Source: Zootoca vivipara
Lineage: Eukaryota
NCBI RefSeq assembly: GCF_963506605.1
Contig: NC_083276.1
Location: 100,874,001-100,938,000 of the forward strand
Reading direction: 5' to 3'
Length of the DNA stretch: 64,000 nucleotides
Shown here in pieces: positions 1-55,218 of the stretch. Every line of letters starts with the position of its first letter. Within the stretch, counting starts at the first letter, position 1. The notes below the pieces were generated by a model that saw only the letters and a list, made by a program, of their open reading frames with translations, made no database searches and was not told the origin of the DNA. A program made the translations under genes and the position numbers.

Positions 1-1763
1 AAATTCAGAGTGTGAACTTCAAAGGCTCGCTGTGTTTTACTTCACATACCGGTATTATTTCAGGAAATATGAATTAGGTTCATGTGACTTAAAATGAATT
101 TCTTCCTAGGGATCTCAGCTTTTCCTAAGAGTTAAAAGGGGCTTAAGTACCCACTTCACAGGCAGGAGAGGAAGACTGGACAACTCCAAGACCCAGTCAC
201 TGCCCCAGCCAGGATAGAGGGCTCAGGGACTAATCACTATTCAGCCCGGCTACAACATCTCCATCGCTGAGCTTGTGTTTCTGAACACACGATATCCTTA
301 AACAAACTGTTGCAATTACACTCCTTCCCCCTTCATGACAGAGGAGGTGACAGCCTGGTTGAGGAATGACAGTATAGACTCAACCTTATCTAGAGTTGTC
401 AAAGGGTTGCCCAATAAATTTCAGACATATCACAACCCTACCTTACCATTTTCCCATACAACCTTACCTAGGGTTGCCATATTTCAAATAGTAAAGCTGT
501 TAGCCTTTTTATTGGGCAAAGTTATTGAAGAAATTCCAGACATATGGGAACCCTACTTCACCATTTTCCCAGGAGCTCCAGCTTAGTTCCAAAGGTATCA
601 CAGCCCTGCCGGGAGAACCCAGGATGCCCACCTGTATTAAAACAAAACATCCAGGTGTCTCAGCTTTCACAGTTCCAATATAAATCAGTCCTTTTCTTCC
701 AACCACTCTGTAAATGATTGGTCCTTCTTCATGTAATGGAAAGTATACAATCAAAAATGAGAGGTTAGTATTCATATTGGGAATCAGCACCAGGGAATGA
801 TATTGGCTGTGGAGCCAGACAAAAGTCCATTCACACTCCAGGTAAGTCTTCAAGCTGGCATCAGACCAAAGTTTCAATCACTGTCTTCAGAATTTGCATG
901 ATCACACATTCTCCAAACATATTTGTTTCCATAAAAACTAATGCGTGTTTCACTGGGAGACTGCTGAAATGTTGCATGTAGCTACTTGATTTTGATGTGT
1001 ATTCAAAAATCCCTATTGGCCAACCCAGGATAGTTATTGCACACAGGGAAAAAAATGTAGAAGGGAAATGTGTTTTGCCATGTGTAATGAAGGATGGCAC
1101 ATTCTGAATTTCTGTTTGCTTACATTTCTCTTTGTAATAATATAGCATGTCTTTACACTGAAGCCTTAGAAATGCAAGTACAAGGAACCATACCTCTATC
1201 ATCATCCAGGAAAAAAATTCCAAAACTAAGTAACAGAAGTCTTTTTTTTCCTTGCTAGAATTAAGGAACTTCTTTGGGTTTATTCAGGTCTTACATGTGC
1301 TCAGTGACTGTGTTTGAATCCTGCAAATCAGACTTGTCACAGCCATAGCTTGGAGATACACACACAACTTTATACCTATGGGAGGCCCACAAGTAGGACA
1401 GAAGGGCAGTAGCCCTTTCCAGATGCTACCAGATGTTCCCAAGTAGCTGGCATTCAGGTGACTGCTTCCACTAATCCTCAAGGTAGTATGTGGACATTAT
1501 GCATGGTTGCCAGTGGTAGCCTTAACCATGAGCATGTTTCACTCATGACTCAAAATGCATCTACTTAAAAATTTGGATAACCCATGTCTCTCAGGGTAGC
1601 TAATACTAAGCTAGAAGGACCATATTCAACTGTTCATCCTTTTCTAATTTCTTAATCATTAATGTGGCACACCAAGGGAAGGAAACCATGATGCAACCAT
1701 TCACAAAGGAGAAGCCAACACCACAACAGCACACATGCTTTCCTCCTAGTCTGCACACTAATA

Positions 1764-2622
1764 CCCATGATATTCTTGTAAAGAAGCTAGTAAAATGCGG
1801 GCTAGACAATGCTACCATTCAATGGATTTGTAACTGGCTGACTGACCAAACCCAAAGGGTGCTCATCAATGGCTCCTCTTCATCCTGGAGAGAAGTGACT
1901 AGTGGGGTGCCACAGGGTTCTGTCTTGGGCCCAGTCTTATTCAACATCTTTATCAATGACTTGGATGATGGGCTTGAGGGCATCCTGAGCAAGTTTGCAG
2001 ATGACACCAAATTGGAAGGGGTGGCATGATATTGCAATTGGGCTGCATCAATAGGAGTATAACATCTAGATCAAGGGAAGTAATAATACCACTGTATTCT
2101 GCTCTGGTCAGACCTCACCTGGAATACTGTGTCCAGTTCTGGGAACCACAGTTCAAGAAGGATACTGACAAGCTGGAACGTGTCCAGAAGAGGGCAACCA
2201 AAATGGTCAAAGGCCTGGAAATGATGCCTTATGAGGAACGGTTTAGGGAGATGGGCATGTTTAGCCTGGAGAAGAGAAGGTTAAGGGGTGATATGATAGC
2301 CATGTTCAAATATATTAAAGGATGTCATATAGAGGAGGGAGAAAGATTGTTTCTGCTGCTCCAGAGAAGTGGACACGGAGCAATGGATTCAAGCTACAAG
2401 AAAGAAGATTCCACCTAAACAATAGGAAGAACTTCCTGACAGTAAGAGCTGTTCAACAGTGGAATTTGCTGCCAAGGAGTGTGGCGGAGTCTCCTTTGGA
2501 GGTCTTTAATCAGAGGCTTGACAGCCATCTGCCAGGAATGCTTTGATGGTGTTTCCTGCTTGGCAGGGGGTTGGACTGGATGACCCTTGTGGTCTCTTCC
2601 AACTCTATGATTCTATGATTCT
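1764..2622 (+). mobile_element. 5'-truncated CR1 LINE (ORF2 RT C-terminal part + 3' UTR) with internal deletion
   Basis: Translations include HDILVKKL..., [31 protein letters not shown] and [17 protein letters not shown]; 3' end TTCCAACTCTATGATTCTATGATTCT is the CR1 8-mer tail; frameshifts present. Confidence 0.97.

Positions 2623-5606: not shown

Positions 5607-5682
<76 letters not shown>
5607..5682. repeat. (GA)38 microsatellite
   Basis: Perfect dinucleotide run. Confidence 1.
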
Positions 5683-5713: not shown

Positions 5714-6068
5714 GGGTGGCACTGTGGGTTAAACCACTGTGGCACTTGGGCTTGCCGATTGAAAGGTTGGTGGTTCGAATCCCTGTGACGGGGTGAGCTC
5801 CCATTGTTCGGTGCCAGCTCCTGCCAACCTAGCAGTTCCAAAGCACACAGTGCAAGTAAATAAATAGGTACCACTCCGGCGGGAAGGTAAATGGCATTTC
5901 CATGCGCCGCTCTGGTTTCACCAGAAGCGGCTTAGTCGTGCTGGGCACATGACCCAGACAAACTATCTGCGGAAGCAGACAAACGCCGGCTCCCTCGGCC
6001 TTTAAAGCGAGATGAGCGCCGCAACCTCAGAGTCGTTGGACTTAATTGTCAGGGGTCCCTTTACCTTT
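5714..6068 (+). mobile_element. Sauria SINE (subfamily A)
   Basis: tRNA-like head with A box GTGGCACTGTGG and B box GGTTCGAATCC, core TAAATAGGTACC...GGGAAGGTAAA, tail CCCTTTACCTTT. Confidence 0.95.
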
Positions 6069-7280
6069 AGAGATTTGAACTTGGGTCTTCCCAATCCTAA
6101 TGCCACATTCTAACCCTTACGCCATATGGGGTGTCATTTTGGAATTCCTAAAATTGAAATATTAGTGGCATCTATTTAGCCCCTACTGCACAAATTCCTG
6201 TGTGGGATAATTGGGGAAACTTATTGATGTGAATTTGACATTTCTGCAAAATTAGGCATATAGCATGCACTCCTCCTTCTCCATATTCATATTACAGGTT
6301 CTGCACATGTTGGGCCAGACTTCTCATATCCTTAATTCTCCCTATACACACCTTCAACCCACATACACAACGGTCATCGTTATTAGAAGTAATATTACCA
6401 CTGTCATCATTATGCTCTACTGCCTTTACATCGTTCTTCAGGCAAATTGCCAGCTACTTATTACGTCAGGCTATTAACTGGATCTTAATTCAATGGCTTG
6501 GCAAGATTTGATGCAATGAGATTTGTGGGACCTTTTTTGCCTGGCATTTGCAATGTGCTGCTTTCAACATGAAACTGTGCACAAAAACCAAGAGTTTTAC
6601 ACGGCGTGCCTTTTAAAGCAGCACTTTGCAGCTTCAGGAGATCTGAACAGACATTGCACTTCTTCCTTTTGCTTTCCCCAAAGTTGGGGCTTTATCCATA
6701 AGGTAGGTATAACTTACAAGCTATAAGTGTTGAACTGAAGGGAATCAGCATAAGATGGTATCCTAACAACCCTGGAGAACCATTGCCATTGAGTGGAGAG
6801 AATACTTGATCTGACTTGACATAAGGTGGCTTGCTATGTTCCAGTGTTATCTTCTCAAGGACCTCTGATCATATTGATTTGGCCTTTGGAGGCAGGATGA
6901 AAAGGAGCTGCTGCGCTTCTAGACAGTAGTTAGACAGGTAGGTTAGTGGCTCTAAATCTCTAAAGCTAAACTTGTGCTGTTTGGTATCTCTGGTTGTGTC
7001 TCCTGTACACTCCTCATTAACCATCACCACCAAAACAACCCACAAAATGTATTGTGTCATCACCGCCATCTGTCCAATGGCTCATGAACCTCTGGTATGC
7101 ATGTGAGAATGCATGTGTTTTTATTTATTTAAAACATTTATTTATTTAAAGCAGTGCTATTTTTCTAGAAAAAGAGATCCCGGAACTCACCACAAACACC
7201 TCCTTTGTTCTCTTTAAAAAGCCCTGATTTAAAGCATTTATAAACTGATCGAGATTTCTAAAATCTCATAAGCAGTGAAA

Positions 7281-19335: not shown

Positions 19336-19700
19336 GGAATGCGGGTGGCGCTGTGGTCTAAACCACTCAGCCTCTTGGGCTTCCCGGTCAGAAGGTCGGC
19401 GGTTCGAATCTCTGCAACGGGGTGAGCTCCTGTTGCTCAGTCCCAGCTCCCGCCAACCTAGCAGTTTGAAAGCACGCCAAAGTCCAAGTAGATAAATAGG
19501 TACCTCTCCGGCGGGAAGGTAAATGGCGTTTCCGTGTGCTGCTCTGGTTTCGCCAGAAGCGGCTTAGTCATGCTGGCCACATGACCTGGAAAAATTGTCT
19601 GCAGACAAACACCGGCTCCCTCGGCCTGTAAAGCGAGATGAGCGCCACAACCCCAGAGTCGTCCGCGACTGGACTTAACTGTCAGGGGTCCTTTACCTTT
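19336..19700 (+). mobile_element. Sauria SINE (subfamily A), full length
   Basis: A/B boxes, core, ACCTTT tail; TSD AAGCCCAGCCTT (19324-19335) / AAACCCAGCCTT (19704-19715). Confidence 0.97.
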
Positions 19701-19931
19701 TATAAACCCAGCCTTAACAAGAACAAGAACCCAGTAAGTGTGGCACAAATCAACAGGGACATGTAAACCCCCCTCCCCTTTGCTTGAAACACCTTTGGTC
19801 TGCTAGTTATGCTACTTGCAAATTTCTTCCACAAATGTGCAAAAATGTACCCCCCTTTCCTTTTAGAGTTCTGAATTATGTGAACATGAACTTTTAAAAT
19901 GAAAGCCTCCATATTATAACAAGATACTGAG

Positions 19932-19934
<3 letters not shown>

Positions 19935-20016
<82 letters not shown>
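19935..20016. repeat. Compound microsatellite (TC)24-(AC)16
   Basis: Direct reading. Confidence 1.
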
Positions 20017-20018
<2 letters not shown>

Positions 20019-20719
20019 TTTTATTGGGTGTTGTATGGCCTTTTTGGGGTATATAATATTCCTGATTTAATTTCAGCCATTTTTTTGCCACTTCATCATT
20101 ACAAATACTAGGCAATAATTAAATTTCACACAGGAATAATTATTAGCATGCCTCAAGAAAGCTTCTGTTGGCTTTAAAATATTTGATTTGAGGAGTTGGG
20201 TGAGCAGTGCTGAAATAATCTGTGCATGTGTGAAGATCACCAAAAGCATCTACATTTCATTTTTCAGAGGGACTGCCATCCAAAGTGCGCTTCTAAAATA
20301 CACCCATGCTGCTTTTTTTTAGTGTTGGCTGTAGAAAATCTCAACCATAGCACACCTTCTGCAAATAGTTTCAATTGGTTGAAAATATACTTGTGAAATT
20401 CAGCAATAAGAAGATGCTAGATTGAACTTTAAGAGTGGTACCCTACTTTTGTCCCTCTGGTGATAGAAGGCATCTGTTATTGGGATGGAGAGGGAGGCTA
20501 ATTTTAGCAACACCTTCTGCCCTCTTCTGACTTTGATCTCCCACATCTTCCCCAGGTGACACCCCCCCCCCCAAATTGGCACAGCACCGTCCTATATCAC
20601 CCTAACAGTTTAAACACAACAAAATGTATAGAAAAGAAAACCCATCCACATAGAGTTCATAGTAATGCAAGAGTCCAGAGAGCAAAATTTAGGTTGCAAT
20701 CCGAACCCCACTTAAGAAA

Positions 20720-21086
20720 AAAGGTAAAGGACCCCTGACAGTTAAGTCCAGTCACGGACGACTCTGGGGTTGTGGTGCTCATTTTGCTTTACAGGTCGAG
20801 GGAGCCGGTGTTTGTCTGCAGACAGTTTTTTATGGGTCATGTGGCCAGCATGACTAAGCCGCTTCTGGCGAAACCAGAACAGCGCACGGAAATGCCATTT
20901 ACCTTCCCGTCGGAGTGGTACGTATTTATCTACTTGCCCTTTTTGGTGTGCTTTCAAACTGCTAGGTTGGTGGGAACTGGGACCGAGCAAGTGAGCTCAC
21001 CCTGTTGTGGGGATTTGAATCACCGACCTTCTGATCGGCAAGCCCAAGAGGCTCAGTGCTTTAGACCACAGCGCCACCTGCGTCCC
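20720..21086 (-). mobile_element. Sauria SINE (subfamily A), inserted in an older small palindromic repeat (~20691-21160)
   Basis: AAAGGTAAAGGACCCCTGAC ... CACAGCGCCACCTGCGTCCC; flanks AGGTTGCAATCC...CACTTA | CCTGAG...TAGGATTGTGCTG form the split host. Confidence 0.95.
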
Positions 21087-23578
21087 AATTACCTGAGTGT
21101 AAACATCACTAAAATCAATACAACTTACTCCTGAGTAGACACGTTTAGGATTGTGCTGTTAGTCTCTCTTCAACGGGAACTGTGCGAATGAATTTTCTAA
21201 ATAAATTATTTTGTGCAATCTGATTGTTATTATTTTTATTATTATTTTGCATATGGAGAGTAATCATTTTTCTTTCACTTTGTGTCAAAACATGTTGAGA
21301 GATTAGATTGCATCAAAGAACAGGAACTTTTTAGAATGGTAAGCGCTTCCTGGTGCGTGCGTGTGCATTATGCTTGTATTTATGCACAAGGACATCTTTC
21401 TGCAGATGTGTTCCTTCGGTGCATTTGCTGGCCAACTGTAAACTGATCACTTACAATTGTACTTGAGTGTTTAGTGACCAGAAAATGTACAAATGCTGCC
21501 TCTGCCAGAGTAACTGAAAGTGCACAGGCAGATTGAGGGAAATACTACAGGCAACAATTAGCCATCACGGTTACCCCTGCTAATACTGCAGAAAATTGAA
21601 ATGTTTGCCTCACTGGGAATTGAAGAGCATTTCAGAAGTTTATCCAGAACAGCAGCAGCAACAGCACCACAAATCTGGCTTTTAAAAATAAATCATATAT
21701 ATATATATATATGAGAGAAACGTAACAGTGGTTTTCTGTACATTTCTATTTTATGTTTCAGTAAGGCCATTCTATATCAATGTAGTCCTGATGAATGGAA
21801 TGCTGGCAGTCTCAAATGACATTTCAAAAGGTGCGGGGACATCGTTCCATAAATGACTGTGTCTGTAAGGCCAACTACATCAAAAAGAAACGGACTTGAA
21901 ATTGCCCCAGATAATCTTTAATACATAAAGATTTTTGCTAGGTGAAAGTGTTATGCTAAAGCTCATAAATCAAGCCAACTTAACAGGGTAGTATTCTGCT
22001 CTCTAGGTAAAGCCTAGCTTGTATTTCCCATTCTGCAGTACCAGCTTAGTATTAATATAATGAGAGGCTATATATATATATTGATAAAATAATGGAGCGT
22101 TTCCATTCAAAGGGTTGTATTGCTCAGTTGACAAAAAGGTTTCTATTCCCATAACAGGAAACAATTTTCAGTGAATTATCTCCCCTCATAAATCACCTCT
22201 GTAGGGTACCCCAATCCCCTGGTGAAAAATAAGTAGGGGTGGTCTGGTCGCAGAGAAGAGGGACAGTCACACACACACAAATTCTCCCACTGTTCCACTT
22301 TCAGAAACCTTACTGTCAGGTGTGTGACAGAACTGTATGCAATTCTGTGTTATTCTGGACTTGAAAGGGTTAGGCTATCAAGTCTCACCTGACCCAAGAA
22401 AACCCAGAGCCCCAACCCCGCTGAAAGCAGGTGCTCAGGGGGTATTTAATGCAAGTGTGGGAGGCCTTAGTTTGGTGGCTTGAGGGTTTGCAGAAGAGAG
22501 ATGGGGAATACCAAGGCTAACAGAGTCCATTTTCTACTGATGGAAACCCTTTCTGGATCAAAGAGGTTTCTTCCAATGGCTGGATACTATCTAGAAACAC
22601 CACCTTTCATTTATATTCTGGGTCTTTTTTCCCCTCCTGCAGTGTAAAATATGACTCGAATGTCAATATCACTATCAAGTACATTTTAGTGACACCTGTT
22701 GGTACCGCTACAGGCTTCCGTGCACACATGGCACCATATTGGAACAATGCAGTTGATTTGACATAATGCAAATAGGTAGAGTACATGGTGCGTGCTCTAT
22801 TTAAATAGCGATGAGGTTTGATCTGAGAAACATTTAACAACATTTCTACAGCAACAAGAACAAAAAGGCTTCGTTCTGACACAATACAATCTTGGCTTTT
22901 TCATTGTGTTGAAATTATACCTTTCAGAGAGCTTTAAGAAGGGTTTAATATTTTGTCAGATTGTCAGGCAGGCAGCTACAGTATTAGCATTTAAGCAACT
23001 GCTTAAAACTCATCTGTTCACCCACATTTTCCCTGAGGGGTGATCCGGCTATCTTGATGTATTAATCTGATCTACTGAACTGTGATGCGTTTCTATTTGT
23101 TCTATAAATGTGATTTTATTGTTGTATTTACGTTGTTTACTGCTGTTATATATATATTTTTTGATGTTGGTGGTATATAATTTTTTGCACCCATTTCCCC
23201 CCCTTATTCTCATATATATATAATGTATTTTAAAAGATCTATGGTTAAGAAAGATTAAAAACATAAATCAAAAGCTATGATGAAAACTGTCACTGACAAA
23301 TTATAAAACAGTCAGTATGAAAGCTACATTCAAAGGGATGGGAGCTGTCATCTTTTTCCTAAGTGCTGGCTATTGTAGGATACCAGTGGGTTTTCAAACC
23401 AGGCCGGGGGGGGGGCAATAAATATATTTAGGGAATGTACCATCTACACCTACTGTGTTTTGATTCCACCGAAACCCTGACATATGGCAATCCGACAGAT
23501 GGGGGCTTAGTGAGGAAGGCAGGGCCAGAATTGCAGGACCTTGGATAGCTCCAGACAGATAGCATTCTCTGACAACAG

Positions 23579-24361
23579 ATTAGACAACTGGGCCAAAGCA
23601 AACAAGATGAATTTTAACAGGGAGAAATGTAAAGTACTACACTTGGGCAAAAAAATTGAAAGGCACAAATACAGGATGGGAGACACCTGGCTTGAGAGCA
23701 GTACATGTGAAAAGGATCTAGGAGTCTTGGTAGACCATAAACTCGACATGAGTCAACAGTGTGATGCAGCAGCTAAAAAAGCCAATGCAATTCTGGGCTG
23801 CATCAATAGGAGTATAGCATCTAGATCAAGGGAAGTAATAGTACCACTATATTCTGCTGTGGTCAGACCTCACCTGGAGTACTGTGTCCAATTCTGGGCA
23901 CCACAGTTCAAGAAGGATACTGACAAGCTGGAACGTGTCCAGAGGAGGGCAACCAAAATGGTCAAAGGCCTGGAAACGATGCCTTATGAGGAACGGCTTA
24001 GGGAGCTGGGTATGTTTAGCCTGGAGAAGACAAGGTTAAGGGGTAATATGATAGCCATGTTCAAATATATTAAAGGATGTCATATAGAGGAGGGGGAGAG
24101 ATTGTTTTCTGCTGCTCCAGAGAAGTGGACACGGAGCAATGGATTCAAACTACAAGAAAAAAGCTTCCACCTAAACATTAGGAAGAACTTCCTGACAGTA
24201 AGAGCTGTTTGCCAGTGGAATTTGCTACCAAGGAGTGTGGTGGAGTCTCCTTCTTTGGAGGTCATTAACAGGCATATGTCAGGAATGCTTTGATGGTGTT
24301 TCCTGCTTGGCAGGGGGTTGGACTGGATGACCTTTGTGGTCTCTTCCAACTCTATGATTCT
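23579..24361 (+). mobile_element. 5'-truncated young CR1 LINE (ORF2 C-terminus + 3' UTR)
   Basis: ORF 23541-24293: RLDNWAKANKMNFNREKCKVLHLG...EKDLGVLVD...[11 protein letters not shown]...; tail CTATGATTCT; TSD ACAACAG at 23572-23578 and 24362-24368. Confidence 0.98.
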
Positions 24362-25828
24362 ACAACAGGATCTTGGAGCTCACCCAAGTCTTTTCACTGC
24401 ACAGTCAGCTCCTTCCTTGTGTGTGCCTATATTGGTGGACCACCAGGGAACACGCCGCTCTTGGTGTAAAAGAGAATCTGCCTCTGGGGACCCAACTTGG
24501 GATCTAGGCCTGGGTTCCATGCCTCTGTGGCTTTGATGGCTGATCATCATTCTCATCTGTGACAGAATCCTAGGTTCTGTTGCCCAGAATCGGTGGGGAT
24601 GGACCACAGCCAGATGGAGCTCTTTGTCCTGAGAGCTCCCTCTAGGTACTAGTACTGTCCTATCAGTATCACCCAGAGCTCTCAGCCAGCTGTCCACAAG
24701 GGCCTATCCCTGCTCAGCACCCCTAGAAAACCCAACCTCAGAGATTTTCAGCTCAGTCTTAGCAGCTTGCACCTGGTGAGGACATTATGTAAGTACTTGC
24801 TACCCCCCCCCCACAAACACACACAAACACCTACAAAAAATTATTGTCTAGCTTTGTGACCACTTCTGACTCCCTGCTGCTGCCTTGAGGCATGGCCCTT
24901 GCCTGATTTTGGCTACCTGTTCCCTGATTCCAAAACTCGACCCAGGCTGACTGCAGACTGGCCTCTCTTTTGTGAACTGCAAAAATGCTTGCTGTAGGCC
25001 CACATAGTAATTGCAGTCCATGTTCTTTTGTGAAGCCCAACAGTGCTGAGCTTCCCTGCTCTCTTAAATCATTAGCATTTTCTTTTGAGGAAGCAGCAGT
25101 AAATCCCTGTTGTTTGATTTAAAGGTGTCACTGAGAGGTTTGTAATTACGTCAGTGTCTACTGAAGCTGAAGTGATTGACAGGTGCTAGCATTTGAAACT
25201 CAAGGTGCTCCCCATAAAAGCCATCAATCAAGTCTCATTTCCATTTTTCAGATGGAGGAGATCTATGGAATTCAAAAGGTTGCACACTTTTTAAACAACC
25301 TAATGAAACTCAGCAAAAGTCCTGTGTTAAGGCGACAAGGCTTTCCCCATTGCCTACCACCCTTTCCCAAAAATTGGCTCGGGGGGGGGGGAGGTGGAAG
25401 ACCCCTTGGAACAGTGCCTTACCCAGTGGGTAAGAGGGACGTGGATGGATGTGTTGTAAAGAAATCTCTGACTTCCACGTGGCTGGAATGTGGCCTACTT
25501 TGCAAAACTAAGAATTGTATCTGTTTGCCCCACCCACTTTTTTGCATCTAGCTCCAACCACTACTGGCATATGGCCCCTGGAATGTTGCCCACAAGGGAA
25601 CATGGCCCCTGAGCTGAAGAAGGCTTCCTGCCCCTGCTTTAGTCTTTTGTGTTGCACTCTTTCCTTATGTGACAACCCTCTAAGTACCTAGTCCTGGGCC
25701 TGTGAATCATAACATGAAATTAGAAATAATCTGTACAGTGCCTAAAAATTCTCGGATCAATACTTGTCCACTTTGTAAGACTATGCTGTATTTGGCAAGT
25801 ATTGCTAGGCAAAGAACTCTTGATTATA

Positions 25829-27188: not shown

Positions 27189-27540
27189 GTAAAGGTAAAG
27201 GGACCCCTGACCATTAGGTCCAGTCATGACCGACTCTGGGGCTGCGTGCTCATCTCGCATTATTGGCCGAGGGAGCCAGCGTACAGCTTCCAGGTCATGT
27301 GGCCAGCATGACAAAGACGCTTCTGGCGAACCAGAGCAGCACATGGAAACACCGTTTACCTTCCCGCTGTAGCGGTTCCTATTTATCTACTTGCATTTTG
27401 ACATGCTTTCGAACTGCTAGGTTGGCAGGAGCTGGGACCAAGCAACGGGAGCTCACCCCATCACAGGGATTCGAACCACCGACCTTCTGATCAGCAAGCC
27501 CTAGGCTCAGTGGTTTAACCCACAGCGCCACCTGGGTCCC
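27189..27540 (-). mobile_element. Sauria SINE (subfamily B), full length
   Basis: Complete body; 25-bp TSD ACCCTACAACCCCTTTTCTTCCTAG at 27164-27188 and 27542-27566. Confidence 0.98.
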
Positions 27541-30330
27541 TACCCTACAACCCCTTTTCTTCCTAGATACCTACAAATGCATATGGAAGGCTGTCATCAC
27601 ACTGCCACCATTGAGGGATTAGTATTGCATCATAGATTTGCATGAACCCAGGGTGGAATAAGGGAGCAAAAGGTAAGTTAGGTTGCACAACGCCAGTGGC
27701 CATGGCATGGGGGTAATAAGAGAAGGGGGGGAGAATTGAGGTTTAAAGCAATGACAGAAGTCTGAGTAAAGCAGGGATGGAGAGGACTAAGAGGCAAACA
27801 GTGGTTTTAAACCACAGCAGAGGTGTGAGTAAGCAACCTTCTCACCATGGACTATTTGAGGGATTGGCATCCTTTATCTCTCACACATGAAGCAGCTGGG
27901 GAATGGAAGAGGGAGACGTTTGAGTTCCCTGAAAAGGGAGAAACACTGAAAAGCAAAAAGAGTGGCATGGTGAAGACTGTGCTTCTGCTTTTACAATGCT
28001 TAATGCTTTAAAATAAATAAACAACAACAAAGAAGAACATTCTAGACATTGGCAGAAATCCCACCAAGCCATGTTACACAGAATCACATCAGAGCCACAC
28101 CGACCAACTACCTAGCCTAAACTGGCAGAAGCGAGTCAGCTATCGAGGGTGACTTGGCAGAAAAGTCTCTCCTAGACCCGACACCTCCCTCAAGTTAGAG
28201 AAGCACTAGAACTGAATGAACTTCATGACTCAGCATGTGCAGCAAGTGCCCCTATGCCTGAGCAGCAAACCTGCCTGGGCTGAGCTACCAAGCTTCTTGT
28301 GGCTCTGGTTCCTTAATTGCCTTCAGTAGACATGCTTCGTCGAAACAGACAATTTACTGGCATGCAAGAAAGATTTCAAAACTTGACTACATGTACAAGG
28401 TGCACAAGGGCACTGCTGTTCATGTTGCTGTGCTGTAACTTTGCCACCGGTTCTTTTGTGATTTCATTGCATGATTCCACTGTAAAGTTGGCTTATCTTT
28501 AACGGCCCTTGTATTTAAAGGTGAGGGGTGGGTCAAAGCACTAATGGCAAAACAATCAAACGAACCACAACCCATTCATGATCAGTTGGCCAACAAAGCA
28601 AAGCTATAACTCAGAGCTAAGCCATTATTTCTTAGAAAGCTTTTTTTATTTTTTATTAGAAAATGTATAATATTTTCCTCTTACCTCTTACCCCCTCCCT
28701 TAAAAAAAAAGCCACTTTGCATATTTTTTTTTAGATACTCTGCACTATTTCTTTTGTGGCAACCATCAAATTTCACCCTTAAAATGTCTTCGAAAGATGC
28801 TACATAAGATCCCTTGTGGAGGATGCAAAATGGCGTCCAATCTGCCAACATAGTTGCTGCAGCTGTCGGTCACAGCTGCAGGAAACAACAGATACAAGAA
28901 CAACTATGCACACAGGGGAAGGAAGAAGAAGCTGTGTTTCTGCCACTGCTAATCATTCAACCCACCTCTGACAAACTACTGAAGAATCTTCTTTTTGCTC
29001 CCCACCCCCACTCAGAATTTTCATGAAATGCTTCCTCCATTTTCTCCAGAGGGGGGACAAGGGGAAAAATGTCCCCCCCAAAACAAGGAGCTTGTCCCCC
29101 CACTCCCCCCTGGCCTTAATATATACTGTCATTTTTATTTCAGATTTCTTAACATATGGGACACAACTCTCCTCCCCCTTTTTTTCTGGTGAGACTACTG
29201 ACTTGCTCTGCCCACAAATAGGATAGAGAATTTTTGGAGACCATTGGCACACAACTCTAAACACGCCACGTGCAAAGGAAAGACACCACTGTTATATTGC
29301 TATTGTATTTGGAACAGTTGTTCCTTGACACCAACTCTTTCTAAAGAATCTAATTTACTAGTATACCTGACAGGATACAGCAACTAATAACTGGTCTTTC
29401 CAGGTTCTTAGCTGATTCAAGACCTAGTCACCTCAGTGGGACTTGTGCCGGAGAGCACTCTTTGCTTGGTTGTAAATCATGTACCACCACCACCCCCTTT
29501 AAAAAAAGGGAAAAAAGCCAAATAGCTTATACAGAGTAAATCTTCTACAACTTACTGCAGTGCTAATCATAAGCATGTTATACAGTAAGTTTGCCTGAAG
29601 CTAAGTTAAGCAGGCAGATTAAGACCGTAATATAGTATCAGGGCNNNNNNNNNNNNNNNNNNNNNNNNNNNNNNNNNNNNNNNNNNNNNNNNNNNNNNNN
29701 NNNNNNNNNNNNNNNNNNNNNNNNNNNNNNNNNNNNNNNNNNNNNNNNNNNNNNNNNNNNNNNNNNNNNNNNNNNNNNNNNNNNNNNNNNNNNNNNNNNN
29801 NNNNNNNNNNNNNNNNNNNNNNNNNNNNNNNNNNNNNNNNNNNNNNNNNNNNNNNNNNNNNNNNATATTCTGATCAATCAAGAGCCCATCCACAACTGAC
29901 AGCCTCGCTAGGCTAAAACATGCCATGGGAGGATATTTTTCTATGTGTGCCATTCCCCTCTCCCTCCTTTTGTATTACATGTGGGCAAAGAAGACCGAGG
30001 AATGCTACAGGTACAAAAATGCATACTTGCCCAACAGTGCACATGGCGATGAAATGACTTCTGTTTCTGATATTCCGTAATGTTCCATTTCCTTAGGCTA
30101 GCTTCCAGTACATCATAGTAGGAAGCTTTGGGCCGTTTTATCACTTGTCTGTTACTAGAACTGCACAGGACCAAACAGCTTTATTTTTCTTTTGTTCTGT
30201 CTTTTCAGATGCCTGATTGTCCTACAATTCTTGCAGCACATTTGACCGTGTCTGTAAAATGAGTCTGTCGTGAAAAATGGGCCTCAGCCAAACGGAGAAT
30301 GGCTTGGGAATTTAAGGTGGATGCCTAAGC

Positions 30331-32101: not shown

Positions 32102-32645
32102 TGTCACGGTCCGGTCAGTGGGCGGTTGAAGCCCTGGCTGAGGACGTCAGGACCAGAGGCAAGATGGTGATGTAGAAGCAGGAACAGGTGCAGGGCTGAT
32201 GGTCCAGCAGCAGGCAGTCGCAGAGTCAAGGAGCAAGGCAGAGGCGAAGGTCTGGGAGTCGAGAAGCAAGGCGTCGGCAAGGCAAAGGTCCAAGGGTCGA
32301 GGATCAAGGCATCGGCAAGGCAAAGGTCCAAGGGTCAAGGATCAAGGCGTCGGCAAGGCAAGGGTCCAAGGAGCGAGAGGCCAGAGGCAACCAGGCAGGG
32401 GTAGTGTTGCTGTGGCAAAGAGTTGAAGGAAAATGCCAAGCTTTTTATCCCTCCCAGCTCTTGCCACCAGGTGCAGTGAGTTATTAAGTGGCCTCACCTG
32501 AGTGGCCACTCCTTGCTTCTCCAGCACAAGCTGAGGTCTTCACCTGAGTGGCCACTCCTTGCTTCTCCAGCACAAGCTGAGGCAGGCCCCAGTCCTGCAA
32601 AGCACTACAGGCCCCTGAGCCTGACCTCTGCCCATACTCCTGACA
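32102..32645 (-). mobile_element. Solo LTR (Gypsy/ERV-type)
   Basis: TGTCA...TGACA termini, perfect 5-bp TSD CCAGT (32097-32101, 32646-32650), minus-strand GGGATAAAAAGC TATA-like box, internal tandem repeats. Confidence 0.9.
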
Positions 32646-34648: not shown

Positions 34649-35007
34649 ATGCAGTTGCCCCCAAAATCAGTTCTCTAACCCTGTGGGATAGTTACATGAC
34701 TAAGTCCAGGGCAAATGATGGGGCTGAAGGTGTTGTGGGACTCTGCAGCACTATTAAGCCCCGCTGCTGCCAGTCTAGGGTGAATACATTATCCTCCATA
34801 TATCTGATATTGGTTTCCAATGATATTGGTTTCCAGGGTTTCCAGGTGAGAGCTCATTGCTTCAAAGCAGGCCTGTCTCCAAGTGCTTCGCCCCTGCCAC
34901 AAACACATTTACAAATGAGCAGGTGCCACATTTAAGCTTCACAATTCCCTGTTTGTCTCTAGCAACACGCACAGGCTACGTTTTAATGTCTTACACATTG
35001 AAAGGAT

Positions 35008-35238
35008 TGGTTACAGGTAGGTAGCCGTGTTGGTCTGGGTCGAAGTAAAATAAAAAAATTCCTTCAGTAGCACCTTAAAGACCAACTAAGTTTTTATTTT
35101 GGTATGAGCTTTCGTGTGCATGCACACTGAAGAAGTGTGCATGCACACTGAAGAAGTGTGCATGCACACGAAAGCTCATACCAAAATAAAAACTTAGTTG
35201 GTCTTTAAGGTGCTACTGAAGGAATTTTTTTATTTTAC
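35008..35238 (-). mobile_element. Penelope-like element 3' terminus arranged as an inverted (fold-back) pair
   Basis: Perfect 83-bp inverted arms 35045-35127 / 35156-35238; AATAAA; CTGAAGA-stem-GAAA hammerhead-type core; 13-bp TSD ACATTGAAAGGAT (34995-35007, 35237-35249). Confidence 0.85.
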
Positions 35239-35555
35239 ATTGAAAGGATGTCTTCTGCAAAATTAAAATTGGAGCATTACTATTTGGAATAATATTTTCA
35301 GATATCAAGGAGGCACAATGGCACTGTAGTTAATGCTAGTAGCCTCGTGATAGGTTTCAAAATTCCAAAGACGATGAGGTTTACCAATGTGCAAACTTAC
35401 AAACCAATCCAGTAACTGCCACAGGTAGCACGAGATGAAAAAAGTGCTTTAAAAAATGGTGCATTTGTCATTTTTTACTCCAGTTTTCAACAGGCAAGAA
35501 TTCTGCCAGTACAGTACAACATTTGCATAGGTTTTAGTTATGTGATGTGACTGTA

Positions 35556-47102: not shown

Positions 47103-47457
47103 GGACGCGGGTGGTGCTGTGGGATAAACCACAGAGCCTAGGGCTTGCCGATCAGAAGGTCAGCGGTTTGAATCCCCACAACGGGGTGAGCTCCCGTTGT
47201 TTGGTCCCAGCTCCTGCCAACCTAGCAGTTTGAAAGCACATCAAAGTGCAAGTAGATAAATAGGTACTGCTCTGGCGGGAAGGTAAACGGCATTTCCGTG
47301 CACTGCTCTGGTTCGCCAGAAGCGGCTTTGTCATGCTGGCCACTTGACCTGGAAGCTATACGCCGGCTCCCTCAGCCAATAAAGCGAGATGAGCGCCGCA
47401 ACCCCAGAGTCGGTCACGACTGGACCTAATGGTCAGGGGTCCCTTTACCTTTACCTT
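47103..47457 (+). mobile_element. Sauria SINE (subfamily B), full length
   Basis: GGACGCGGGTGGTGCTGTGG head, (ACCTTT)n tail; 14-bp TSD TACCTCTTAGTGGA (47087-47100, 47458-47471). Confidence 0.98.
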
Positions 47458-54870: not shown

Positions 54871-55218
54871 GTAAAGGGTAAAGGGACCCCTGACCATTAG
54901 GTCCAGTCGTGACTGACTCTGGGGTTGCGCGCTCATCTCGCATTATTGGCCGAGGGAGCCGGCGTATAGCTTCCAGGTCATGTGGCCAGCATGACAAAGC
55001 CGCTTCTGGCAAACCAGAGCAGCACATGGAAACGCCGTTTACCTTCCCGCTGTAGCGGTTCCTATTTATCTACTTGCATTTTGATGTGCTTTCGAACTGT
55101 TAGGTTGGCAGGAGCTGAGACCAAGCAACGGGAGCTCACCCCAACACAGGGATTCGAACCGCCAACCTTCTGATCAGCAAGCCCTAGGCTCAGTGGTTTA
55201 ACCACAGCACCACCTGGG
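54871..55218 (-). mobile_element. Sauria SINE (subfamily B)
   Basis: Complete body; 11-bp TSD CTCAGACCTAG (54860-54870, 55219-55229). Confidence 0.97.

What the first reader, a model, noticed from the sequence alone, without database searches (positions are those of the whole stretch)
35008..35249. Penelope-type fold-back insertion centred on a minimal hammerhead-ribozyme core with a triplicated palindrome
Seen: perfect 83-bp inverted arms (35045-35127 / 35156-35238) and a 13-bp TSD. The centre has three copies of the palindrome GTGTGCATGCACAC (35114, 35135, 35156) separated by TGAAGAA. The last copy reads CTGAAGA-A-[stem II]-GAAA-GC-TC-ATACC. This is the hammerhead core CUGANGA...GAAA...UH with an extra A after A9 and helix III reduced to the palindrome AGCU. 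Established: Penelope-like elements carry minimal hammerheads thought to act as dimers, and often have inverted terminal copies. Inference: the strand inversion and the 21-bp stutter both map to the ribozyme's palindromic stem II, suggesting that hairpin self-priming or template switching at the ribozyme builds the fold-back. In this copy the 5' strand of stem I (expected GTAT, to pair with ATAC) is replaced, so it may be catalytically dead.
Basis: partly seen in the sequence, partly recalled or inferred. Interest (0 to 1): 0.8.

Follow-up and report, generated by a model that had tools for sequence, protein, structure and literature searches.

The report
Head-to-head Penelope hammerhead mini-insertion
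This is a very young, still-segregating 229-base insertion in a lizard genome, made of two head-to-head end pieces of a Penelope-like retrotransposon carrying its small hammerhead ribozyme motif; it is a clean example of a known insertion style, and the ribozyme in this copy is almost certainly dead.

Summary
The window has a 229-bp insertion (35008-35236) between identical 13-bp target duplications. It has 84-bp perfect inverted arms, three copies of GTGTGCATGCACAC spaced by TGAAGAA, and a complete minimal hammerhead core on the + strand (C3 35148 to C17 35177).

Contigs from another individual of the same species, and from a related species, join 34994 directly to 35237. So the site is empty elsewhere, the insertion is real and young, and it is polymorphic.

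The family is hugely repeated. Its consensus has GTGTAT before C3, so helix I is indeed lost in this copy.

The layout matches published Penelope-like element (PLE) behaviour: an inverted 5'-truncated copy, a one-sided 37-nt "tail", and outer ends at +83/85 and +122 from A9. Anolis Poseidon protein nicks and extends both DNA strands and starts reverse transcription at two internal sites about 34 nt apart (about +85 and +119).

The fold-back therefore needs no ribozyme-driven hairpin priming. Antisense-arm breakpoints in other copies are scattered. In this copy all junctions do sit at the edges of the stem II palindrome, which fits template jumping or cDNA annealing there.

The centre is not confirmed by independent reads. 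The scan has noted this family many times before in this genome. It is a known kind.

The parts
34995..35007 (.). Left copy of the 13-bp target-site duplication, ACATTGAAAGGAT
   Evidence: The empty-site contigs in X5 and X11 keep a single copy (records 16 and 9).
35008..35044 (-). One-sided 37-nt 'tail'. It is the distal 3' extension of the long (antisense-oriented) arm. The sense strand reads TTCGACCCAGACCAACACGGCTACCTACCTGTAACCA, which is AC-rich.
   Evidence: It has no mirror partner in the right arm. Many family copies and RNA reads end at 35008/35010 with diverse AT-rich flanks (table 7). It matches the 30-40-bp PLE tail (PMC8557442) and the stretch between the two RT start sites of PAc (PMC11167929).
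35045..35128 (-). Long arm. It is an antisense-oriented copy of the hammerhead-to-RT-start module. On the - strand it carries helix II, GAAA, helix III and the cut site, but TTCTTCA stands in place of the CUGANGA box.
   Evidence: It is an 84/84 perfect mirror of 35155-35238. It departs from the family consensus (..TTCTTCAGATACACTGAAAC..) after 35128 (X21 loose ends).
35114..35169 (.). Centre: three copies of the 14-nt palindrome GTGTGCATGCACAC (35114, 35135, 35156) separated by TGAAGAA. This amounts to 2.7 units of 21 nt.
   Evidence: As single-stranded DNA it folds at -39.5 kcal/mol, z = -12. It is not bridged by any listed independent contig.
35148..35182 (+). Minimal type-I hammerhead motif. 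C3 35148, A9 35154, bulged A 35155, helix II 35156-35169, G12-A15.1 35170-35173, G15.2/C16.2/U16.1 35174-35176, C17 35177 (predicted cut 35177/35178), helix I 3' strand ATAC(C) 35178-35182. The helix I 5' strand is missing.
   Evidence: Features as in PMC4209133. Rfam gives no hammerhead hit, even at E<=10.
35148..35236 (+). Short arm. It is a sense-oriented copy that runs from C3 to the proximal terminus (...TTTTTTTATTTT). The next two bases, AC, are shared with the TSD.
   Evidence: Other family copies end at the same point: loose ends at 35047, which is the mirror of 35236, and at 35231/35052 (table 7).
35237..35249 (.). Right copy of the 13-bp target-site duplication

Best explanation
This is a recent, still-polymorphic insertion made by the machinery of a Penelope-like element (PLE). 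What was copied is only the short non-coding module that runs from the element's minimal hammerhead to its internal reverse-transcription start sites.

The inferred sequence of events is as follows. The PLE endonuclease nicked both target strands 13 bp apart, which gives the TSD. Each 3'-OH primed cDNA synthesis on element RNA. One cDNA started at the distal RT start site (left end, with the 37-nt tail) and the other at the proximal site (right end, no tail). The two convergent antisense cDNAs met in the hammerhead region. The left cDNA ended just after copying the helix II palindrome. The right cDNA reached C3, jumped back about 21 nt once or twice (microhomology G), and finally continued on the left cDNA, whose terminal palindrome is self-complementary.

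Shown: the insertion, the TSD, the empty allele, the arm geometry, the family-wide termini, and the loss of helix I. Inferred: the order of priming and the jumps.

Consequence: neither strand encodes a complete ribozyme. Any transcript of the locus would fold into one long hairpin, so the copy is a dead by-product.
For: Empty site: X5 record 16 and X11 record 9 join 34994 to 35237. Junctions: X1 records 1 and 8 cover both junctions with 0 differences. Abundance: summed contig depth over the insert is about 1e6, against 18-50 in the flanks. Termini: loose ends with low-agreement, AT-rich flanks occur at 35008/35010 and at 35047, 35052 and 35231, so both outer ends are family-wide termini. Geometry: counting A9 (35154) as +1, the termini lie at +83..85 and +122, with a 37-nt tail. 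In Anolis PAc the tail spans about +85..119 from the ATG whose A is A9. Biochemistry: PAc cleaves and extends both strands, RT starts at two internal sites, and the hammerhead is dispensable for insertion. Textbook PLE layout: inverted 5'-truncated copy plus a one-sided 30-40-bp tail. Min-HHR hallmarks are met. The arms are 84/84 identical and the TSDs 13/13 identical. The hairpin folds at -154.5 kcal/mol.
Against: No RT/GIY-YIG ORF of this family is in the window, and no Repbase/Dfam search was possible. The PLE assignment therefore rests on motif and architecture, not on homology to an autonomous element. Unlike PAc, all three sense frames of the module are closed, so the autonomous partner is unknown. 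The centre (three palindromes) is not confirmed by independent reads. Two or three successive jumps at one position are an ad hoc reading of a single locus. A pre-existing 21-nt duplication in the source RNA cannot be excluded.
Confidence: 0.72

Rival explanations
1. Snap-back self-priming. A single cDNA primed at one nick copied the RNA up to the helix II palindrome. It folded back on that palindrome and copied itself, and the second arm was then joined to the other target end.
For: The inversion point lies exactly at the edge of a 14-nt perfect palindrome and the arms are 84/84 identical. Some other copies have joints that look like snap-backs, with the turn in or next to helix II: 35103->35162, 35107->35160, 35110->35159. 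Two unchecked first-reader notes report folds at stem II elsewhere in this genome.
Against: A simple snap-back gives ...GAGCTTTC-P-GAAAGCTC..., without the two extra TGAAGAA-P units. The second arm would end at an arbitrary point, but it ends at a terminus shared with many independent copies. The 14-nt DNA hairpin is weak (-2.4 kcal/mol, no better than shuffles). PAc extends both strands in vitro. Antisense-arm breakpoints in other copies are scattered.
Confidence: 0.15
2. The insertion is real, but the triplicated centre is an assembly or polishing artefact of a perfect palindrome. The true number of 21-nt units would then differ.
For: No listed contig spans 35033-35214 at this locus. PLE tandem/inverted structures are known to cause assembly problems (PMC8557442).
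Against: The units are 100% identical and in exact register. X1 holds 0.97 of the sampled 31-mers of the 1.5-kb stretch. Nothing in the data contradicts the assembly.
Confidence: 0.1
3. A fold-back or MITE-like DNA transposon, or a palindrome made after insertion by replication template switching.
For: The structure is a long inverted repeat flanked by a TSD.
Against: The inverted repeat does not reach the left end, where there is a 37-nt unique tail. Most family copies are single-arm and continue into the consensus upstream of C3. The empty allele lacks the entire fold-back at once. A 13-bp TSD and ends at RT start sites fit retrotransposition.
Confidence: 0.03

Closest known systems
Poseidon_Ac (PAc), Penelope/Poseidon-clade PLE of Anolis carolinensis (Frangieh et al. 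2024, PMC11167929)
   Same: Both have a minimal hammerhead at the start of the mobilised module: CUGANGA, one extra nucleotide, a long helix II, GAAA, a 4-nt palindromic helix III and C17. Both have two alternative 3' termini about 35 nt apart, at about +85 and about +120 from A9, which gives a one-sided tail. Both-strand priming explains head-to-head copies. Targets are AT-rich or ATT-adjacent. No RNA ends are seen at the predicted cut site.
   Different: By eye the sequence is unrelated outside the core motifs. Formal alignment was left out because the published consensus has no reference id here. Helix II is 14 nt and a perfect palindrome here. The module is closed in all three frames, whereas the PAc ORF starts at helix II. 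No autonomous partner was identified.
PLE min-HHRs (Cervera & de la Pena 2014, PMC4209133)
   Same: [quoted passage not shown] Pairs of motifs on opposite strands 100-700 bp apart were already reported.
   Different: In this copy helix I is lost, and the opposite-strand partner lacks the CUGANGA box. The family was not shown to cleave.
Generic PLE insertion architecture (Craig et al. 2021, PMC8557442; Evgen'ev & Arkhipova 2005, as cited there)
   Same: 5' truncation, an inverted 5'-truncated copy next to a sense copy, and a 30-40-bp tail at one end only.
   Different: The scale is miniature (229 bp, no ORF). There is a 21-nt stutter at the junction.
L1 twin priming (5' inversions of LINE-1)
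   Same: It works alike: the second target strand primes on the same RNA, and two cDNAs are joined by microhomology, giving an inverted segment within one TSD. This comparison comes from my own knowledge and was not checked here.
   Different: In L1 the second priming is internal and opportunistic. In PLEs both strands are cut and extended by the element's protein from defined RT start sites.
Non-LTR retrozymes (Cervera & de la Pena 2020, PMC7229834; Li et al. 2026 preprint)
   Same: They are non-autonomous hammerhead-bearing PLE derivatives.
   Different: Retrozymes are tandem full monomers that yield circular RNAs. Here there is a single head-to-head insertion with only partial 21-nt repeats.

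Membership tests
Penelope-like element (PLE) insertion | Minimal hammerhead motif of the PLE type in the terminal repeat region | tested here: met
   Core, bulged A, G10.1-C11.1, AGCU helix III and C17 at 35148-35177. Hallmarks as in PMC4209133.
Penelope-like element (PLE) insertion | Inverted 5'-truncated copy adjacent to a sense copy, inside one TSD | tested here: met
   Arms 35045-35128 / 35155-35238. The 13-bp TSD and the empty allele are shown.
Penelope-like element (PLE) insertion | Optional 30-40-bp 'tail' at one end only, bounded by two RT start sites | tested here: met
   A 37-nt tail at 35008-35044. Family-wide termini occur at both boundaries. The positions, +83/85 and +122, compare with about 85-119 in PAc.
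Penelope-like element (PLE) insertion | Family linked to an ORF with a telomerase-like RT and a GIY-YIG endonuclease | not testable with these tools
No Repbase/Dfam. Pattern scans of the public collections found nothing.
Penelope-like element (PLE) insertion | Sequence homology to a curated PLE consensus | not tested
   The Poseidon_Ac consensus was read but has no reference id. Formal alignment was left out. By eye only the core motifs are shared.
Hammerhead ribozyme (functional, type I) | Conserved catalytic core: CUGANGA ... GAAA ... UH | tested here: met
   Positions 35148-35177 on the + strand.
Hammerhead ribozyme (functional, type I) | Helix I closing the core | tested here: not met
   0 pairs in this copy. 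The family consensus has GTAT before C3, which would pair with ATAC.
Hammerhead ribozyme (functional, type I) | Match to the Rfam hammerhead covariance models | tested here: not met
   No hammerhead family at gathering score or at E<=10. The only hits are hairpin-driven miRNA look-alikes below threshold.
Hammerhead ribozyme (functional, type I) | Self-cleavage | tested here: inconclusive
   No pile-up of RNA read ends anywhere on the stretch, including 35177/78 and its mirror 35105/06 (table 6). Only about 6% of one run was read, and those reads come from other copies.
Non-LTR retrozyme | Tandem full-length hammerhead monomers | tested here: not met
   Only 2.7 partial units of 21 nt. There is one complete core.
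MITE / fold-back DNA transposon | Terminal inverted repeats that reach both ends, with family copies sharing both arms | tested here: not met
   The left 37 nt are unpaired. Most family contigs continue as single-arm consensus upstream of 35148.

The most novel reading that the evidence does not exclude
The perfectly palindromic helix II of this family's hammerhead is a preferred site where the two convergent cDNAs of a both-strand PLE insertion anneal, or where the RT jumps template. On this reading the ribozyme sequence itself shapes the inverted architecture of PLE insertions, and the 21-nt stutter is a footprint of repeated RT jumps at the 5' edge of the ribozyme.
Probability: 0.22. Interest if true: 0.55.

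Novelty: new member of a known kind. Interest (0 to 1): 0.3.

Why it matters
The locus is a natural, dated product of PLE integration. Presence and absence alleles in one species fix its exact boundaries. Those boundaries reproduce in vivo, in a different PLE family, the geometry that Frangieh et al. derived in vitro for Anolis Poseidon: two RT start sites, a one-sided tail, and both strands primed. It shows that the machinery has been active very recently in this lizard. The junction at the ribozyme palindrome is a small lead on how the two cDNAs are joined, a step that the published model leaves open. It does not reveal a new kind of element or a working ribozyme.

Tried and rejected
1. Rfam, whole window at gathering score and 451 bp at E<=10: no hammerhead hit. 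The strong miRNA/sRNA rows are artefacts of the long hairpin.
2. Other copies in the window: none.
3. Exact-pattern scans of metagenome, viral and prokaryote genome collections for family motifs: 0 matches.
4. Pfam scan of the ten longest ORFs, looking for an RT or GIY-YIG domain: nothing.
6. Formal alignment to the Poseidon_Ac consensus: left out, because the sequence has no reference id. Only short motifs were compared by eye.
7. Using the joints that point 'to 35148' as evidence for a hot spot at C3: rejected. Many are marked 'between: not known', and the reference's own breakpoint forces that coordinate. Only the scattered 'from' positions are informative.
8. Inferring the strand of family transcripts from the 3:1 mate bias: rejected, because the library's strandedness is unknown.
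9. MITE and post-insertion palindrome readings: rejected on the tail, the single-arm majority and the empty allele.

Full report
**What is there**

- ACATTGAAAGGAT occurs at 34995-35007 and again at 35237-35249. It brackets 229 bp (35008-35236). The duplication does not extend by a single base on either side.
- Mirroring around 35141/35142 gives a perfect 84-nt run, 35045-35128 against 35155-35238. The only central mismatches are the five asymmetric bases of each TGAAGAA spacer.
- GTGTGCATGCACAC starts at 35114, 35135 and 35156. Tandem Repeats Finder calls a 21-nt period, 2.7 copies, 100% matches.

On the + strand the last unit reads as follows:
- CTGAAGA: C3 at 35148 to A9 at 35154
- A: 35155, extra nucleotide
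- GTGTGCATGCACAC: helix II, with G10.1 at 35156 and C11.1 at 35169
- GAAA: 35170-35173
- GCT: 35174-35176
- C17: 35177
- ATACC: the bases that follow

A descriptor I wrote for such minimal hammerheads found only this locus in the 64 kb and nothing in 200 shuffles. The pattern search likewise expected 0.00 chance matches. Rfam's hammerhead models do not score it, even at E<=10. The miRNA-like rows in that search are artefacts of the long hairpin.

**It is a real, young, polymorphic insertion**

I laid contigs of three DNA runs and raw reads of one RNA run on 34750-35500.
- In run X1 (same species), one contig runs 34750-35032 and another 35215-35500, each with 0 differences. Both junctions therefore exist outside the assembly.
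- In X5 (same species, another study), a 2,080-nt contig covers 34750-34994 and continues without a break at 35237-35500.
- In X11 (a related species, about 90% identical in the flanks), a 612-nt contig does the same.
- These two contigs are the empty site with a single copy of the 13-mer. X5's share of sampled words (0.84) equals the stretch minus the insert.

So the whole fold-back arrived in one event, after the species split, and still segregates. No listed contig bridges the centre, so the three-fold stutter rests on the assembly alone.

**The family**

Summed contig depth over the insert is about 10^6, against 18-50 in the flanks. This is not a copy number, but it shows a very abundant family, and it is also present in the related species.

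Loose ends give the family consensus where this copy departs from it.
- Before 35148 the majority reads ...TTCTGTTTCAGTGTAT. After 35128 (left arm) it reads TCTTCAGATACACTGAAACAG..., which is the same sequence on the other strand.
- The family therefore has GUAU in front of C3, able to pair with AUAC after C17. In this copy it is replaced by the preceding palindrome, and helix I has 0 pairs.
- The - strand arm has helix II, GAAA and the cut site, but TTCTTCA where CUGANGA should be.

Neither strand therefore encodes a complete ribozyme. A transcript of the insert would fold into one hairpin of -154.5 kcal/mol (z = -25), which buries the core.

RNA reads of the family exist on both strands, but none lie in the unique flanks. 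No pile-up of read ends occurs anywhere, including at the predicted cut (tables 2 and 6).

All three sense frames of the module are closed, as the sequence shows directly.

**What it is**

Cervera and de la Pena (PMC4209133) list the hallmarks of the minimal hammerheads of Penelope-like elements:
- the G10.1-C11.1 pair
- a long helix II
- a short helix I
- a palindromic 15.2-16.2, so that helix III forms only in dimers

All are met here. They also noted pairs of motifs on opposite strands 100-700 bp apart.

Craig et al. (PMC8557442) describe typical PLE insertions as 5'-truncated. Often an inverted 5'-truncated copy abuts the sense copy, and a 30-40-bp "tail" sits at one end only. Here the left arm carries 37 nt (35008-35044) that the right arm lacks.

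Frangieh et al. (PMC11167929) purified the Poseidon protein of Anolis carolinensis and reported the following:
- It nicks and extends both DNA strands.
- Reverse transcription starts at two internal sites of the RNA.
- The tail is the stretch between those sites, about nt 85-119 counted from the ATG. In their consensus, the A of that ATG is A9 of the hammerhead.
- Hammerhead mutants insert normally.
- No RNA-seq reads begin or end at the hammerhead cut site.

Counting A9 (35154) as +1, the right end of this insertion is at +83 to +85. The left end, mirrored, is at +122. The geometry is therefore the same within a few bases, in a family whose sequence is otherwise different.

Both ends are also family-wide termini. 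Contigs and RNA reads with diverse, AT-rich continuations stop at 35008/35010 and at 35047, 35052 and 35231. Position 35047 is the mirror of 35236 (table 7).

**How it most likely arose**

- Shown: one event, a 13-bp stagger, two outward-facing 3' ends at canonical start sites, identical arms, and junctions at the palindrome edges.
- Inferred: both target strands were nicked and each primed a cDNA. One started at the distal site and one at the proximal site.
- Inferred: the left cDNA stopped just after copying helix II.
- Inferred: the right cDNA reached C3, re-copied the 21-nt unit (a jump with G as microhomology), and then continued on the left cDNA. The left cDNA's terminal 14-mer is self-complementary and so matches either cDNA.

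A simple snap-back on the palindrome is less likely, for four reasons.
- It predicts no extra TGAAGAA units.
- It predicts an arbitrary end for the second arm.
- The 14-nt DNA hairpin is weak (-2.4 kcal/mol, no better than shuffles).
- In other copies the inner ends of the antisense arm are scattered, from 35030 to 35123 (table 5).

A few joints do look like snap-backs near helix II: 35103->35162, 35107->35160 and 35110->35159. Two unchecked notes of this scan report folds at stem II elsewhere. I could not test it.

**Membership and limits**

Motif and architecture tests for a PLE insertion are met. The link to an RT-GIY-YIG ORF could not be tested, because no such ORF is in the window and no Repbase/Dfam search is available here. 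I left out a formal alignment to the Poseidon_Ac consensus because the published sequence has no reference id here. By eye only the core motifs are shared.

As a functional hammerhead, this copy fails the helix I test and the Rfam test.

It is not a retrozyme, because it has no tandem full monomers. It is not a MITE, because it has a unique tail, most family copies are single-arm, and its ends lie at RT start sites.

**Earlier scan notes and verdict**

This scan has recorded the same family many times in this genome: 172 notes mention Penelope and hammerhead. Follow-ups on a 92-nt class, a 130-bp class and a head-to-head insertion with a 13-bp TSD reached the same "known kind" verdict. My termini data agree with the first two classes.

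Verdict:
- The Penelope and dead-ribozyme readings are supported.
- The idea that the ribozyme builds the fold-back is not needed, and as a rule it is contradicted by other copies.
- This is a clean new member of a known kind. Its modest added value is the empty-allele proof and the in-vivo match to the two-start-site model.

Noticed in passing
window 35008-35236, family-wide (table 2): RNA reads of the family show a roughly 3:1 mate-strand bias that flips between the two arms. Family transcripts are therefore mostly of one orientation relative to the hammerhead. Which orientation cannot be told without the library's strandedness.
   Followed up: partly
window 35182-35186, mirror 35097-35099 (table 7): A large sister subfamily, dominant in the related species X11, diverges right after CATACC. 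It reads ..CAGAACAAACTTAGTTGGTCTCTAAGGTGCTA instead of AAAATAAAAACTTAGTTGGTCTTTAAGG. The A-rich stretch after helix I is thus the variable part of the module.
   Followed up: no
family joints, table 5c (e.g. 35214->35127 with GGTAT between; 35210->35148 with GTCT): Head-to-tail (tandem) junctions of the same module exist elsewhere in both species, as expected for PLE partial tandems. GGTAT would give a 5-bp helix I.
   Followed up: no
window 2518-2615 and 24265-24362; also 2039-2496 / 23794-24252: Two roughly 95% identical copies of a repeat. Their ends (...GGGGTTGGACTGGATGACCCTTGTGGTCTCTTCCAACTCTATGATTCTA) look to me like CR1-type LINE 3' ends. That identification is from memory and was not tested.
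   Followed up: no
window 5714-6076, 19343-19702, 47107-47453; inverted copies 20714-21088, 27191-27544, 54874-55203: A SINE-like family of about 300-360 bp in at least six copies, 70-95% alike. Two copies adjoin GA/TC microsatellites (5607-5682, 19935-19983).
   Followed up: no
window 32258-32371 and 32494-32582: Short G+C-rich tandem arrays (38-bp unit x3; 46-bp unit x1.9, 100% identical), about 2.5 kb upstream of the insertion.
   Followed up: no
window 34805-34835: TGATATTGGTTTCCA is duplicated 16 nt apart in this genome. The related species X11 differs heavily in just this stretch (many substitutions and indels at 34785-34825).
   Followed up: no
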